Assembly (NCBI RefSeq): GCF_000143415.4 | Contig: NW_003314300.1 | Coordinates: 387,581-451,580, forward strand | Direction of reading: 5' to 3' | Length of the DNA: 64,000 nt | Source: Selaginella moellendorffii | Lineage: Eukaryota; Plantae; Lycopodiophyta | Shown here: piece by piece, positions 40,688-46,007 of the stretch | Layout of the letters: every line of letters starts with the position of its first letter | How positions within the stretch are numbered: the stretch's first letter is position 1 | Program-made: the position numbers and the translations under genes | The notes under the pieces: model-generated | What the model was told of the DNA's origin: nothing | Seen by the model: only the letters and a program-made list of their open reading frames with translations | Databases searched by the model: none

Positions 40688-41040
40688 TGTGCTTTAGAGG
40701 AGTGCAATATACATCGAAACCAAATTTGAAGTAATTTAATTAGTAAAAATTTATTAAAATTTATGTGGTAACAACTTAAGAAAGATTTAGTGATGATTTG
40801 AAATCAATTGGTGGAAATTTTAAAAGAATGGATGGAATTTTAAAAGTTAAGTTTATGTTTATAAAGAATAAGTCATTATGAATCTTTATAAACATCTTAA
40901 AACTCAATAAAATTCTTTTAAGTTTATGGAGAAAATACACTAATCATTATGTTTTTATATATCTTAGCATAGCAATAACATACTTTCAAAATATTATATG
41001 TTAAGTTGAAAAGAAATTTTTTATTAATGCATTATAAATT
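40688..41040 (+). repeat. AT-rich dispersed repeat, copy 2
   Basis: Shares the blocks listed for 36730-37235. Confidence 0.75.
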
Positions 41041-41204
41041 TCAAGAACATTTATGATAAAAATATATCGTTTTTAAATTCTACTTAACATTTTTAATATC
41101 ATTTATTAAAATTAAAAATGTGAAGTCTAAATCGTAGCCGTACATTTCTGTATTTCATTTCCATATTCCAATAGAAACCCTAAAACTTGGAGTGTGAGAA
41201 TGCG

Positions 41205-44200
41205 ATGAGGGCGATCGTTGTGGCGGGGACATGCAGCGGGGCGGGCAAGAGCAGCATCGCGCTCGGCCTCATGGCGGCCTACACGCGCCGCGGCCTTCGC
41301 GTCCATCCATTCAAGATTGGCCCCGGTGAGTGATAAATGCTCTTGAGCTCTAAGATTCCTACCTCCTCCGCGCTCTAGATTTCTCGGATCCAATGCATCA
41401 CAAGGCCGCGACGGGGCATGATTCTTACAATCTGGATAGCTGGATGATGAGCAGGCGAGTGAAAATCTCAAGAACTCTGCGCGAATTTTGATATTCTTGT
41501 TTGGCCTTTGTATTCTCCAGAGAGGCGAACCAAGCGTGCTTCATTCGATGCGCTCCAGCTACTGACGTTGCAATCGTGGAAGGAGTCTTTGGAATGTTTG
41601 ATGGCCGCGATGGGAAATCCGAGGCCGGAAGCACTGCCGAAATGGCCAAGATTTTGGGAGCTCCGGTCCTTCTCGTGCTTGATACCAGAGGATTCGCTCG
41701 AAGTGCCGCAGCTTTGATTCGAGGATACACCGCTTTCGATCCAGAAGTCACCTTTGCTGGAATTATCTTCAACAAGGTTTGCTACTAAGTTTTCTCGTTC
41801 CTAGTTTATCTTTTTTCTTGTTTTCTTCTTCTATGTAGCTGGAGAGCTCCGCTCACAAGGCTTGGCTTATGGAAGCTGTGTCTGCCATCGATTCGAGCGT
41901 TAAAGTTCTCGGTGGCATTCCTATCGTAGACGGCTTGCATTTGGCTGAGAATCAGTTCTACCCGAGCCTGAGTGGTGAAGAAGCAGTACCGGCGAGCTAC
42001 ATTCAAGTTTTTGCCGATTTGATTGAGCATCACGTCGACTTGGATGGTCTGTTAGAGGCTGCCGGTGTGTGGAAGCCAAAGGGTGGCACGAACTTTTACT
42101 TGGAAAACTTCCGTTCAGCGCCACCTTATGCCAAAGTCCGCATCGGAGTCGCGAGGGATGCTGCCTTTTGCCTCTATTACCAGGAGAATCTCTCGTTGCT
42201 TCAAGGTAATTACTTCGTGTTTTCGTGTTTGTCTCTCTTAAGTTGCGGATTTCTTGTCCTTCTGACAGACGCCGGAGCAGAAATAGTTTTCTTTTCACCT
42301 TTGAAGGACTCCCTCCCGACGAGACTGGATGCTATTATCTTTGGAGGCGGCTATTTGGAGCATCACTTGGAGAAGCTATCTCTGAACAAGAAACTCCTCT
42401 ACGCGGTGCGAGCATTCGCTGATGCCGGAGGAATTATCTATGGAGAAGCTGGAGGCGCTATGTACTTGTCACAAGGCATCGAGGTATGGTGTCCAAATTT
42501 TAGTTCTTGCGTGGTGCTGAATGACGTTGTCCCTTGCAGACAGACAAGCACCAGCCGTTCACTATGTGCGGCGTTTTTCCTTTTTGGACACGAATGAAAT
42601 TAAGAGCGACAACAAAAGAATATGTCAAGGTTTGTTTGGTTTTCATTATTTGCTTCTTCGTTCGACATTATCAAGAATAAACAGGCAACAACACAAGAAA
42701 GTTGCGTATTGTTTCCTCCTCATATTGGCGAAATTCGCGGATACATGTTAAACTGTAGCGAGGTCTTTTGGCTGCAGGCAGATGGTATAAACATCTGTCC
42801 GAGAGGGTACGCCAGTTTATTTATTTGTTTATTGTCATTTTGATTTTGTGAATTGCGACAGGTTCGTGTTGAAGTATGAAACCTCAGAAAAGATGGAAGA
42901 AGTAGAAGGCTACATGCAAGGAAATGCAATGGCTACGTTTGCGCGGCTTCATTTCGGCAGCAACCCGGCTATAGTTCACACTCTCATAGACCGCTGCAGG
43001 TTTGCTCATTCGCCTTCGCTCCTAACTTCTGACTTATGGCTGAAAAATCTTCCAGAATGGATTCGTCCAAAGCTGCTGCCGTTGCCGCTGCTTCTGCTTC
43101 TGCAGTAGCGCATGCCGGCCCAGCAGCAGCAGCGGCCGCTGGCTCCGCTGCAGCAAGAGCTGTGACAGCGGCCCTCGGAGAATCGAGGGAGATGTCCCCT
43201 TCCCGTATGGAACGCACAAAGTTTCACGGCAAGCTATCTAGTGGTGACTGGAGTGAGCGCGGAAGAGATCCGTTTAGGAGACATACAAGGTCTCTCAGTA
43301 CAAGTCCTGTTTACACACGCCTTACTATCGACGAGGAGTGTCCCGACATCGAAGTTGACATCAAAGAGACGACTGAGGATGGCTCTTCTGCCAGGATTGC
43401 AAGGTCTAAATCCGAGGTTTGGGATGCTCGCGGACAGGATGCTTTGTCCCCACAAGATCTTACAGAGGTTGTCACGTCGATGGATGATCAGTTCATAAGT
43501 GAGGAGGGTCGAGCAGCTGGGCGACAGTGTTTAGTGACGACGACAAGAAGAATGGACCCGAATCAAGGCATTTATGTGCCTTTCACCGTGAAAGTGATAC
43601 CACACAAGATCGTGTCGCTCTTTCCAGTGGCTACAGAGATCCTTCTTAAGCTTGGTAAAGTTTCCTTGTTTTTCTAGTAAAGTTGTAATAGTGACACACG
43701 CTTTTAGTTTCTGGCAGGGGCTGGACACCGTTTGCTTGGGGTGACCGATGCGTGTGATAAGCCGGCTGGAGTCAGAATGGGACGACATATTGTAAGTGTC
43801 GTGTTTTGCGCTTGAAAGGTTATTTTACTATGTTCATGAAAACGTATATTGCAGGTGTGTCGCAACCAGCAGCGATCCAGCATTGGGAAGGAGAATGAGT
43901 TGTCGTACAAACTCGATCTCCCATGGCTTTCGAAGACCAAGCCTCATTTGATTATCACTCAGGTTAGAAAAGTTCTTTTGAGAATGTCATAACGTGAGGC
44001 TTTTGTTCATGCAGAAAGTGTGCTCTCTGTGCTACATGGATAGCAAAGACGTGACTGAAGAGATTACCAGAGCAGGCCTCCAAGATACGAGGCTGTTCGT
44101 TGTAAATCCACACACGGTACGAGGAAATCTAGCTCTCCATAAATCGGTGCTGATTTTCACTCCTTAGTTATCTGATATCTGGGCATTCATCATGGATCTT

Positions 44201-44813
44201 GCGGACATGCTGGGTTTGTACAAGGAAGCCTGCCAACTTATAAACTCCCTCCGACTCCGCTTGAGAAGAATCGCTGCTAGTGTCGCTGTCCATCACCAGC
44301 CGAGACTGCTTCTCCTTCAAGGCCTCGATCCGCTTACTCTCGGGGGCCGATGGATTGCGGAGATGGAAATCCTGTCCGGTGCCTACGACGGCTTGCAAAA
44401 ACCAGGCTGTGCGTCTGAGAGGCTACACTGGCAACGTATCACATCCTACGCTCCCGAGTTTATTATTCTGGCTCCTTGTTCCACATCCGTCGAGCAGACA
44501 TTGTCCGAGGTACTTGTTTACGATTCCCCATATCTTTGTCTGCTGATTTTCGTGCTTCCAGGTGCACAAGCTTGCCAGACAGCCGGGGTTTTGGTCCGTG
44601 CCGGCGGTGGAGTGTCGACAAGTCTACATTTGCGACGGATCATACTTCAGCCAACCCGGTTTGAGGGTGGTGGAGGGAATGGAGCTTCTGGCTCACATCC
44701 TCCACCCATCTACAGTCTCGGCTCCATCTGCCAGTGGAGTGCTGAAGCTTTCGCTCAAGCCGGGGCAAAAATGCCGTCCAGAGGAGCTCTACAGGCACTT
44801 TCTAGTCGAGTGA
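41205..44813 (+). CDS. Fusion: cobyrinate a,c-diamide synthase (CbiA/CobB)-like + linker + BtuF/TroA-type cobalamin/Fe-chelate binding domain, 14 exons, ~953 aa
   Basis: Exons 41205-41325, 41379-41454, 41521-41776, 41839-42205, 42269-42483, 42540-42629, 42685-42806, 42862-42999, 43056-43654, 43718-43791, 43855-43962, 44015-44116, 44168-44509 and 44562-44813 sum to 2862 nt, open throughout. CbiA motifs: AGTCSGAGKS, FKIGPDFSDP, NLDSWM, VEGVFGMFDG, STAEMAK.LGAPV.LV.D, ARSAAA..GY..FD, IGVARDAAFC.YYQEN, FSPL.D, GGGY.E, EGY..GN..A..LHF. Binding-domain motifs: KIVSLFPVATEIL..LG, P.LIITQ.VC.LC, P..IILAPC, PAV...VY..DG.YFSQPG.R.VEG.E.LA.ILHP. Confidence 0.88.
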
Positions 44814-46007
44814 AATGGTGGTGTATCAGGTACTTTGCTTGTTTCTTTCCTTTACTTTCCTTCTCTTTCCCGGCTGCTCGAAGCCACTGAGTGCTCACGG
44901 ACTTTGCGGCGTGGTTTCTCGCAGGATCGTGATCAGACATTCGCTCCCAGGGGCCCAACCAAAGATTAGTGGGTTATGATCAAGAAAAAGACCCAACCAA
45001 TGTGCGCATCATGACTGCTGCGTGCTAAAAAGAAAGAGAAGAAGAACGAACACTCCCTTGGTTGGAGATTTGGAGAATTCAATGCATCTTAAAGGTAAGC
45101 AGCAGTCGCTGTTCAAGCTAGAGTTCGATTGACTATTGAATTCTCTTTTTTGCTTAAATTTTTCTAGAAGCCCATGATGGTATCAATCGACCTCAAACCG
45201 ACCCATTACAGAAAGTGGAGGAGATAGCAAAGCATGACGCAAAACGCGGGTGCCATGCGAGCCGTCCGATCTAGGGCTTGGAACTTTGACAAAAGGTGGC
45301 AAATAAGGATCTTTCTTTAGTCCACTGGCGTGATATTTCCAAACTTCCATGTGACTTGCCCATGTTCGCGTGCCGAGATTGTCAAAAAATGGGCTCGAAA
45401 GTTTCCAAGAACCGAAAGGGAACAAAACAAACGAGCGAGCAACAAATTTAACGAACGAATCAAGCAGGAGTGTGGACGGACGTCGTGAGAGCAAGAGCAG
45501 GGAAAAAAAAAAGAAAAAAAGAAAGCACTTTGAAACAATGGAAAGAAAAAATAGACAACCATGTTGTCAAACATTTGTATTCCAAGGTTGCATTTTTTGG
45601 GGGGCCCCGCCTGGCAAATTTAGCGATCACGTAGGATGACGTTGGCCGGGGTGGCGGGGTGGGATATAATATAATCTCTCCAACTTTTAGGGTTCTTGCG
45701 TGGCTCACATTTTCAAGAACCTTTTCTCGCTTGGCTTTTTTTCCGCTGTTTGTTGGAGGGTGGTGCCACTGCTGTGATCGATCCTCCGCCTTTTTTCTTT
45801 CTCACAGTAGTGATGTTGAGAGTTTTCCAAAAAGTCAAACTGGTGGGGAGGATGCTAGACTGCGACGAATCCATAGAGATGAAGATCGAAGAATGCAGGG
45901 ACAAGAGATTGGCGGTGGTGGGATTAGCTTAGCCGATCCATCGATCGATTACCAAACGAGGAAAGATTCATAGAGAGGATTTGAATTGGAGGCAAGAAAA
46001 GAAAGAC

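What the first reader, a model, noticed from the sequence alone, without database searches (positions are those of the whole stretch)
42440..42960. Glutaminase half of the CbiA-like protein looks catalytically dead while the ATPase half is intact
Seen: the nucleophile-elbow motif reads YGEAGGAMYL, where bacterial CbiA/CobB has YAECGG.MYL (Cys to Ala). The downstream GHEFH motif reads GYMLN, and the ASY.H.HF motif reads ATFARLHF (His to Arg). The P-loop SGAGKS, FK.GPD..DP and VEG..G.FDG are retained. Inference: several targeted active-site losses with no frameshift suggest a selected pseudo-glutaminase. The protein would then be an ammonia-dependent amidase or an ATP-gated ligand sensor, not a standard B12 enzyme. 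The consensus motifs are recalled, not aligned here.
Basis: partly seen in the sequence, partly recalled or inferred. Interest (0 to 1): 0.78.

Follow-up and report, generated by a model that had tools for sequence, protein, structure and literature searches.

The report
Spikemoss CobB-like enzyme, dead glutaminase half
A spikemoss (Selaginella moellendorffii) gene that joins a vitamin-B12-pathway-type enzyme to a tetrapyrrole-binding-type domain has lost both catalytic residues of its glutamine-splitting half, yet it is intact, spliced and transcribed, so it most likely works without glutamine.

Summary
The window carries Selaginella moellendorffii LOC9659294, a 14-exon, 953-aa gene at 41205-44813 (+). 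It encodes a CobB/CbiA ATPase, a GATase_3 domain, an Ala-rich linker and a BtuF/heme-type binding domain.

- **Lost residues:** the glutaminase nucleophile is Ala334 (GCT) instead of Cys. The catalytic His is Arg444 (CGG). Two more near-invariant residues are also gone (Pro303Leu, His398Asn).
- **Why this means inactive:** Ala at either of the two catalytic positions abolishes glutaminase activity in the solved homologue GatD.
- **What is kept:** P-loop, GPD..DP and VEG..G.FDG.
- **Not error or recent decay:** spliced transcript-like contigs from three studies, one DNA run and the genome's second locus (LOC9648553) carry the same codons. The lycophyte Diphasiastrum has Ser at this site, as does an unidentified plant transcript.
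- **Not family-wide:** Marchantia, mosses, streptophyte algae and most green algae keep Cys. It was lost at least 6-8 times. In Riccia (Cys to Gly) the domain has dN/dS 0.09.
- **Open:** whether the protein amidates with free ammonia or only binds ligand.

The scan noted this fusion before, on this gene and on its second locus. No paper on it was found.

The parts
41205..44813 (+). Whole coding region of S. moellendorffii LOC9659294, 14 exons, 953 aa. Exons: 41205-41325, 41379-41454, 41521-41776, 41839-42205, 42269-42483, 42540-42629, 42685-42806, 42862-42999, 43056-43654, 43718-43791, 43855-43962, 44015-44116, 44168-44509, 44562-44813.
   Evidence: The translation is identical to NCBI isoform X1, XP_024539831.1 = P0281. 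All 13 introns appear as joints in spliced contigs of three studies.
41205..42120 (+). CobB/CbiA-type ATP-dependent synthetase half (aa 1-245). The P-loop GTCSGAGKS lies at 41226-41252. GPDFSDP and VEGVFGMFDG are retained.
   Evidence: Pfam CbiA 56.4 bits and AAA_26 42.5 bits. NCBIfam CobB equivalog NF002204 scores 379.6 bits against a cut-off of 254. 17 of 19 columns that are at least 95% conserved are unchanged.
41944..41961 (+). Degenerate 'PERHLG' motif (aa 187-192 read AENQFY). It lies in a loop modelled with pLDDT below 50.
   Evidence: Leu191 and Gly192 are 96% conserved in Cys-keeping members. The Leu-Gly pair is intact in 172 of 180 Cys-keeping members and lost in 13 of 16 Cys-less ones. 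The phylogenetically corrected test is underpowered. Low-confidence segment 188-198.
42121..42997 (+). GATase_3 (CobB/CobQ-type glutamine amidotransferase) domain, aa 246-461. The fold is kept and the active site is lost.
   Evidence: Pfam GATase_3 scores 76.5 bits, against 107.6 for Marchantia. AlphaFold pLDDT is mostly above 90 across the domain. Foldseek matches GatD at TM 0.62-0.67, normalised by the GatD chain.
42343..42360 (+). GGGYLE (aa 299-304). The Pro of the GGGYPE motif is Leu303. The second locus also has Glu304Lys.
   Evidence: Pro303 and Glu304 are 100% conserved among 138 Cys-keeping relatives. Glu304Lys is seen in P0282.
42448..42450 (+). Ala334 codon GCT at the nucleophile elbow (motif YGEAGGAMYL, 42439-42468), in place of the catalytic Cys.
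   Evidence: Alignments. The residue sits between strand 329-333 and helix 335-340 of the model. No variant in the reads. The second locus has the same codon.
42736..42762 (+). RGYMLNCSE (aa 393-401). It is the counterpart of bacterial RGHEFHYSE and of RGQ.YH.SE in the fusion family. The conserved second His is Asn398.
   Evidence: That His is present in 180 of 209 sequences.
42944..42946 (+). Arg444 codon CGG (motif ATFARLHF, 42932-42955), in place of the catalytic His.
   Evidence: This column aligns to the HPE His of PdxT and to residue 189 of GatD. It is 98% His in Cys-keeping relatives. The second locus has the same codon.
43056..43590 (+). Ala-rich, low-complexity linker (aa 462-640).
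   Evidence: No family match. It has the highest dN/dS of the four parts in liverworts.
43591..44813 (+). Class III periplasmic-binding-protein-like domain (aa 641-953).
   Evidence: Pfam Peripla_BP_2 scores 30.1 bits against a cut-off of 27.5. The top PDB matches of the family profile are an iron-binding protein (4m7o), a vitamin B12-binding protein (5ysc), a periplasmic heme-binding protein (2r7a), hemin-binding HmuT and IsdE.
41455..41520 (+). Intron 2, a GC-AG intron.
   Evidence: The joint 41451>41518, which may lie up to 3 bases further on, appears in contigs of three studies. It gives residue Glu67 as in the NCBI protein.

Best explanation
This is the S. moellendorffii member of an uncharacterised eukaryotic fusion family: a CobB/CbiA-type amidoligase, a GATase_3 domain, a linker and a BtuF/heme-type binding domain.

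Shown:
- In this lineage the glutaminase domain has become a pseudo-enzyme. The Cys-His dyad is gone (Ala334, Arg444), as are Pro303 and His398.
- The domain is predicted to keep its fold.
- The gene stays intact and is transcribed.

Inferred:
- The loss is old. It probably passed through a Ser intermediate (TGY to TCY to GCY) shared with other lycophytes.
- The domain is kept as a structural partner of the synthetase half.
- The protein therefore acts without hydrolysing glutamine. Most likely the intact ATP-dependent synthetase half still activates a carboxylate of a tetrapyrrole-like ligand held with help of the C-terminal binding domain, and amidates it with free ammonia. Ammonia-dependent carbamoyl-phosphate synthetase I works this way with its dead glutaminase domain.
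For: - **Gene model:** equals NCBI isoform X1, and all introns are confirmed by spliced contigs of three studies.
- **Catalytic positions:** identified by profile alignment to PdxT and GatD. C94A and H189A in GatD are totally inactive (PMC5871853).
- **Conservation of the lost residues:** Cys334, Pro303 and Glu304 are 100% conserved and His444 is 98% conserved in 138 Cys-keeping relatives.
- **Second locus:** LOC9648553 carries the same codons.
- **Nearest relatives:** Diphasiastrum and transcript P0153 have Ser at this site and share the changes at 191, 192 and 303. The P0153 Ser codon is TCA, one step from GCT.
- **Evolutionary rate:** not raised in the domain, with a GATase/ATPase terminal-branch ratio of 0.83.
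- **Riccia:** the pair, both Cys to Gly, has GATase dN/dS 0.093 against 0.083 for the ATPase half.
- **Fold:** AlphaFold pLDDT 88.4 and pTM 0.89.
- **Synthetase half:** motifs retained, and the CobB equivalog scores 379.6 bits.
- **Location:** there is no N-terminal extension before the P-loop, so it is probably cytosolic.
Against: - No activity data exist for any member of the fusion family, and its substrate is unknown.
- Between the two Selaginella loci the GATase domain has 5 non-synonymous and 2 synonymous differences (pN/pS 0.71). One is Glu304Lys at a 100%-conserved site. This hints at present-day relaxation, though not significantly.
- Bryopsidales orthologues lost the P-loop Lys as well as the Cys yet remain conserved. 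The conserved job of the family may therefore be non-catalytic.
- From my memory of Fresquet et al. 2004 (PMID 15311923, not readable here), bacterial CbiA uses ammonia only at a Km of tens of millimolar. That is high for cytosol.
Confidence: 0.55

Rival explanations
1. Non-catalytic ligand handler. The whole CobB-like module has become an ATP-binding or nucleotide-gated scaffold that helps the C-terminal binding domain to hold, sense or deliver a corrinoid or tetrapyrrole. No amidation takes place.
For: - Bryopsidales orthologues (Ostreobium, Caulerpa, P0185) lost the nucleophile, the P-loop Lys (GAGSTT, GVGATS) and Glu86, yet remain conserved.
- In them the binding domain is the slowest-evolving part, with a binding-domain/ATPase branch ratio of 0.31-0.49.
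- The nucleophile was lost at least 6-8 times in the family.
- The binding domain has the lowest pN/pS between the two Selaginella loci, 0.10.
Against: - Selaginella keeps Lys15, Asp41, Glu86, Asp93 and 17 of 19 conserved synthetase columns. That would be unnecessary for pure binding.
- Most family members keep the complete catalytic set.
Confidence: 0.28
2. Glutamine-derived ammonia is supplied in trans by a separate glutaminase subunit that docks on the synthetase half, so the reaction stays glutamine-dependent.
For: Split synthase/glutaminase pairs exist in related systems (MurT/GatD, PdxS/PdxT).
Against: - No candidate partner was seen.
- The dead domain still occupies the cis position and is predicted to be folded.
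- The PERHLG motif, which tends to disappear together with the nucleophile, is also gone. This suggests the glutamine-coupled apparatus was dismantled rather than re-partnered.
Confidence: 0.07
3. Recent decay, a pseudogene, or a sequencing or assembly error confined to this assembly.
For: Several active-site changes are clustered. pN/pS in the domain between the two loci is 0.71.
Against: - The open frame has 14 exons, and the spliced contigs of three studies show no variant at the three codons.
- The second locus has identical codons.
- Each change needs two substitutions.
- Diphasiastrum and P0153 also lack the Cys.
- Across the whole gene there are 19 synonymous and 10 non-synonymous polymorphisms.
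Confidence: 0.04

Closest known systems
[quoted passage not shown]
   Same: Same two-domain module, a DTBS-like P-loop synthetase plus GATase_3. It scores 379.6 and 347.3 bits, above both curated cut-offs. The synthetase motifs are retained.
   Different: It lacks the Cys/His dyad, Pro303 and the PERHLG motif. It is fused to a linker and a binding-protein domain. It is encoded in a land plant, a group not known to make B12. It has introns and no operon context.
Ni-sirohydrochlorin a,c-diamide synthase CfbB (NF033195)
   Same: Homologous over the full module at 330 bits. CfbB shows that the fold can amidate a tetrapyrrole other than a corrin (PMC7242693).
   Different: The score is far below the 560-bit cut-off. 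CfbB uses glutamine. No F430 pathway is known in plants.
GatD, the GATase_3 subunit of the MurT/GatD lipid II amidotransferase
   Same: Same Pfam family and fold (Foldseek TM 0.62-0.67 normalised by the GatD chain). Its Cys94/His189 dyad aligns with positions 334 and 444.
   Different: GatD is a separate subunit and is catalytically active. The engineered C94A and H189A mutants, which mimic this natural protein at those sites, are inactive (PMC5871853).
Carbamoyl-phosphate synthetase I of ureotelic vertebrates (from my own knowledge, not tested here)
   Same: A synthetase that keeps a folded glutaminase-like domain whose nucleophile Cys is replaced, and that uses free ammonia.
   Different: The synthetase fold and the chemistry are unrelated. 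This is an analogy for the mechanism, not homology of the synthetase half.
BtuF, ShuT and HmuT class III binding proteins, and algal CBA1
   Same: The C-terminal domain matches Peripla_BP_2. Within the PDB it matches B12- and heme-binding members among the best hits. CBA1 is a BtuF-like algal B12-uptake protein (PMC10828217).
   Different: Here the domain is fused to a cytosolic enzyme and has no signal peptide. CBA1 homologues were reported absent from mosses and liverworts (PMC11439496), whereas this fusion is present there, so it is a different family.

Membership tests
CobB/CbiA a,c-diamide synthase (NF002204 / TIGR00379) | Whole-protein HMM score above the curated cut-off | tested here: met
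   NF002204 scores 379.6 bits (cut-off 254) and TIGR00379 scores 347.3 (cut-off 261.4) for P0281, which is identical to the window's protein.
CobB/CbiA a,c-diamide synthase | N-terminal P-loop synthetase domain with GxGK(S/T), GPD..D and VEG..G..DG | tested here: met
   GTCSGAGKS, GPDFSDP and VEGVFGMFDG are present. 17 of 19 highly conserved columns are unchanged.
CobB/CbiA a,c-diamide synthase | Glutaminase nucleophile Cys in E-C-G-G | tested here: not met
   Ala334 (GCT). The column is 100% Cys in 138 relatives.
CobB/CbiA a,c-diamide synthase | Catalytic His, the first His of S-Y-x-H-x-H-F | tested here: not met
   Arg444 (CGG). The column aligns to GatD residue 189 and to the HPE His of PdxT.
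CobB/CbiA a,c-diamide synthase | ATP- and glutamine-dependent amidation of the a and c acetates of (hydrogeno)cobyrinic acid, within a B12 pathway | not testable with these tools
Land plants are not known to make B12. Known B12-dependent metabolism is reported lost in vascular plants (PMC11439496).
CfbB (Ni-sirohydrochlorin a,c-diamide synthase, NF033195) | Score above the curated cut-off | tested here: not met
   330.1 bits against a cut-off of 560.
Eukaryotic CobB-GATase_3-linker-Peripla_BP_2 fusion family (unnamed) | All three domains in one polypeptide, orthologous to algal and bryophyte members | tested here: met
   Pfam finds all domains. Full-length relatives occur in liverworts, mosses, lycophytes, streptophyte algae and chlorophytes. 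Embryophytes form one clade. Most exon lengths match those of the liverwort genes.
Class I (triad) glutamine amidotransferase fold, GATase_3 branch | Strand-nucleophile-helix elbow fold | tested here: met
   Residue 334 lies between strand 329-333 and helix 335-340 in a model of pLDDT 88.4. Foldseek hits are CTP synthases, GatD and HisH.
Pseudoenzyme (maintained catalytically dead domain) | Catalytic residues lost while the domain stays under purifying selection | tested here: inconclusive
   - Loss of the residues is shown.
- Selection is shown for the Cys-less Riccia pair, dN/dS 0.093.
- Selection is suggested for Selaginella by the old shared loss and the unraised rate.
- The Selaginella two-locus comparison gives pN/pS 0.71 on 7 changes, p = 0.16.

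The most novel reading that the evidence does not exclude
The eukaryotic CobB-binding-domain fusion does not belong to B12 synthesis at all. It would be a cytosolic tetrapyrrole- or corrinoid-handling protein whose glutamine-hydrolysing apparatus (the Cys-His dyad, the GGGYPE Pro and the synthetase-side PERHLG motif) is a dispensable module. That module was shed independently at least six to eight times: in lycophytes, Riccia, Bryopsidales, Elliptochloris and others. The family would then be a natural experiment that maps the residues coupling glutaminase to synthetase in CobB-type enzymes, for which no structure is solved. It would also point to a function in land plants that needs only ATP plus ammonia, or only binding.
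Probability: 0.3. Interest if true: 0.72.

Novelty: new variant of a known kind. Interest (0 to 1): 0.56.

Why it matters
CobB/CbiA enzymes are textbook glutamine-dependent steps of B12 and F430 synthesis. Finding one conserved in plants that have no known B12 metabolism is already unexplained.

A natural, long-lived and expressed version with both catalytic glutaminase residues removed says that whatever the protein does in lycophytes does not need glutamine hydrolysis. The same applies to Riccia and several algae. This narrows the search for its function to two options: an ammonia-dependent amidoligase, or an ATP-linked tetrapyrrole binder.

It also provides ready-made controls for experiments, namely Cys-keeping Marchantia or Physcomitrium against Cys-less Riccia or Selaginella. 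The tendency of the PERHLG motif to disappear with the nucleophile offers a testable candidate for the unknown coupling or ammonia-channel element of this enzyme class.

Tried and rejected
- **First gene model:** my first model used a GT-AG intron 2 (41459-41524). The RNA contigs and the NCBI protein show a GC-AG intron at 41455-41520, so it was corrected.
- **PDB search with exons:** a sequence search of the PDB with the exon 4+5 translation found nothing. A family profile was needed. No CobB/CbiA structure appears to be solved.
- **Short exons:** exons 6, 7 and 8 match no Pfam or NCBIfam model on their own because they are too short.
- **The large representative search:** I used it once.
- **Literature:** searches found no paper on the plant fusion and no readable copy of the CbiA kinetics paper.
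- **Diphasiastrum DNA:** not on record, so its Ser codon is unknown.
- **Source of transcript P0153:** the organism behind SRR32617125/129/130 could not be identified. A second word search found no closer named relative. The tree places it weakly with mosses (support 61 and 77 in two trees). The AU test does not reject a clade with the two lycophytes (p = 0.12).
- **Selaginella pN/pS by domain:** too few changes to decide.
- **Nucleophile loss against PERHLG loss:** the independent-pairs test gave 3 pairs the same way, 0 opposite and 2 unchanged, p = 0.25. It is underpowered.
- **Link to known B12 use:** rejected. Mosses and Marchantia keep the Cys although METH is reported absent from them (PMC11439496).
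- **RNA editing restoring Cys:** rejected, because the RNA-type contigs show the genomic codon.
Full report
**What is there.** The window has eukaryotic, plant-like structure, with GC-rich genes in AT-rich spacers. Reading 40900-45300 gave a 14-exon + strand gene from 41205 to 44813 that encodes 953 aa.

- Contigs from three independent, apparently RNA-derived studies skip all 13 introns at the predicted places. They corrected one junction: intron 2 is a GC-AG intron at 41455-41520.
- The corrected translation is letter-for-letter NCBI XP_024539831.1, Selaginella moellendorffii LOC9659294 isoform X1.
- On that protein Pfam finds CbiA (56.4 bits), AAA_26, GATase_3 (76.5 bits) and Peripla_BP_2 (30.1 bits).
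- The NCBIfam CobB equivalog scores 379.6 bits against a cut-off of 254. The CfbB model stays below its cut-off.
- The P-loop starts at residue 8, so there is no targeting extension.

**The observation.** The quoted strings are present where stated: YGEAGGAMYL (aa 331-340), RGYMLN (393-398) and ATFARLHF (440-447). GTCSGAGKS, FKIGPDFSDP and VEGVFGMFDG are retained.

- A library-wide search with the in-frame exon 4-intron-exon 5 translation returned 2831 relatives.
- Among near-full-length relatives that keep the nucleophile (n = 138), Cys334, Pro303 and Glu304 are 100% conserved and His444 is 98% conserved.
- A profile of 19 intact GATase domains aligns the first His of 'H.HF' with the HPE His of PdxT. 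It ends its match to S. aureus GatD exactly at residue 189.
- In GatD, a member of the same Pfam family, C94A and H189A are 'totally inactive for glutamine deamidation' (PMC5871853).
- Selaginella therefore carries natural equivalents of both knock-out mutations at those sites. It also carries Pro303Leu, and His398Asn at the conserved second His of the 'GHEFH' block.

**Error or recent decay is excluded.**

- GCT and CGG are each two substitutions away from Cys and His codons.
- No variant at these codons is listed for a DNA run or for the spliced contigs of three studies.
- The genome's second locus, LOC9648553, was brought to my attention by scan note s1-411619. It encodes a 953-aa protein with 13 differences and the same GCT, TAC and CGG codons.
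- Across the gene the polymorphisms seen in reads are 19 synonymous and 10 non-synonymous.

**Family context.** The same fusion occurs in many lineages.

- Embryophytes: liverworts (Marchantia, Riccia), mosses (Physcomitrium, Ceratodon) and the lycophyte Diphasiastrum.
- Streptophyte algae: Spirogloea, Mesotaenium and Chlorokybus carry the full fusion. For Chara and Closterium only partial models (582 and 523 aa) without the binding domain were recovered.
- Many chlorophytes carry it too.
- Oomycetes, dinoflagellates and other protists have versions fused to Kelch repeats.

Most keep ECGG and H.HF. The nucleophile is replaced in the following lineages:

| Lineage | Residue at the nucleophile |
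|---|---|
| Selaginella | Ala |
| Diphasiastrum | Ser |
| Unidentified plant transcript P0153 | Ser (TCA) |
| Both Riccia species | Gly (GGT, against TGT in Marchantia) |
| Elliptochloris | Gly |
| Bryopsidales | Gly |
| Several unnamed algal groups | Gly or Ser |

On trees this is at least 6 changes among 59 fusion members and at least 8 among 195 relatives. Among the sequences examined, only the two Selaginella loci lack both the Cys and the catalytic His.

**Age of the loss.** Selaginella, Diphasiastrum and P0153 share further changes at 191, 192 and 303.

- Selaginella and Diphasiastrum group together with support 97-98.
- A clade that also includes P0153 is not rejected (AU p = 0.12).
- The simplest reading is one old loss through Ser, followed by Ser to Ala and His to Arg on the Selaginella line.

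**Is the dead domain maintained?**

- Long-term: with branch lengths fitted per domain on one topology, the Selaginella terminal branch is 0.476 (ATPase), 0.396 (GATase) and 0.386 (binding domain). This ratio of 0.83 is like that of Cys-keeping lineages.
- I rebuilt exact coding sequences for four liverwort genes. The Cys-less Riccia pair has dN/dS 0.083, 0.093, 0.218 and 0.173 for ATPase, GATase, linker and binding domain. Cys-keeping Marchantia has 0.144, 0.054, 0.166 and 0.194. A nucleophile-less GATase domain can therefore remain under strong purifying selection.
- AlphaFold models the Selaginella module confidently (pLDDT 88.4, pTM 0.89), with residue 334 at a strand-helix elbow. Foldseek finds CTP synthases, GatD and HisH.
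- Against this, the two Selaginella loci differ by 5 non-synonymous and 2 synonymous changes in the GATase domain, against 4 and 10 in ATPase plus binding domain. One of them is Glu304Lys. Fisher p = 0.16, so this is only a hint of current relaxation around the former active site.

**Mechanism.**

- Shown: no Cys-His dyad, an intact synthetase motif set, a predicted folded domain, and a tetrapyrrole-type binding domain. The closest solved relatives of that domain include B12- and heme-binding proteins.
- Inferred: the protein acts without glutamine hydrolysis.
- My preferred reading is an ammonia-dependent amidoligase, by analogy with carbamoyl-phosphate synthetase I. That analogy rests on my own knowledge.
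- The main rival is a non-catalytic, nucleotide-linked ligand handler. It is favoured by Bryopsidales orthologues, which have also lost the P-loop Lys yet keep a slowly evolving binding domain.
- A secondary lead is the synthetase-side PERHLG motif. Its Leu-Gly pair is intact in 172 of 180 Cys-keeping members and lost in 13 of 16 Cys-less ones. The phylogenetically independent test is underpowered, with 3 pairs the same way, 0 opposite and p = 0.25.

**Comparison and novelty.**

- By HMM score this is a CobB. By catalytic residues it fails two defining features of a glutamine amidotransferase.
- I found no paper on the fusion or on its dead variants.
- Dorrell et al. report known B12-dependent metabolism lost in mosses and vascular plants (PMC11439496). 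The family's role is therefore open, and Cys retention does not track known B12 use.
- I rate it a new variant of a known kind.

Noticed in passing
window 41455-41520: Intron 2 uses a GC donor (GC-AG). Contigs of three studies support it, and it matches the NCBI protein (Glu67).
   Followed up: yes
window 44830-44924: Probable 95-nt GT-AG intron in the 3' UTR. Contigs of three runs leave the genome at 44830 and continue with the sequence that follows 44924 (loose ends).
   Followed up: partly
window 44168-44224: NCBI isoform X2 (P0001) lacks 19 aa (757-775, LSDIWAFIMDLADMLGLYK), which implies an alternative acceptor inside exon 13. The contigs laid here show the long form. Isoforms of 760 aa are also annotated.
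   Followed up: partly
window 41100-41226: The AT-rich stretch just upstream of the start codon has about 20-fold higher summed contig depth in the DNA run (330 against about 17). This suggests a repeated element.
   Followed up: no
L008 (GL377629.1:978665-986250), second S. moellendorffii locus LOC9648553: A 98.6% identical copy with the same exon structure, either the other haplotype or a recent duplicate. It carries Glu304Lys at a position that is 100% conserved in catalytically intact relatives.
   Followed up: yes
P0178 (Ostreobium), P0150 (Caulerpa), P0185: Bryopsidales orthologues lost the P-loop Lys (GAGSTT, GVGATS), Glu86 and the nucleophile, and have Gln at the second His. The full-length fusion nevertheless remains conserved, with the binding domain evolving slowest.
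   Followed up: partly
P0169, P0171, P0173, P0176, P0179, P0180, P0183 (unnamed metagenome or assembly proteins of 1300-1500 aa): A clade that keeps the Cys but has Arg at the catalytic His position (SYARLHF / SYVRLHF, as in Selaginella). Its synthetase motifs are also divergent.
   Followed up: no
window 41944-41961 and relatives: The conserved PERHLG motif of the synthetase half tends to be lost in the lineages that lost the glutaminase Cys (13 of 16, against 8 of 180). It is a candidate coupling or ammonia-path element. The association is not significant after phylogenetic correction.
   Followed up: partly
P0188, P0058, P0194, P0288-P0290, P0295: Oomycetes, dinoflagellates and Triparma carry the CobB module fused to Kelch repeats, with or without the binding domain (Pfam lists).
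   Followed up: no
L004-L007 compared with the window: Most exon lengths match between Selaginella and the liverwort genes (121, 76, 256, 215, 122, 138, 74, 342 nt). The liverwort genes have 15 exons against 14 here, and their introns are far longer (genes of about 8-9 kb against 3.6 kb).
   Followed up: partly
P0285 (EukProt transcript fragment, 641 aa): A fragment related to P0153 also lacks the conserved second His of the RG..H block (RGFMCSSSE). It starts after the nucleophile, so its Cys state is unknown. Its organism is not identified.
   Followed up: no
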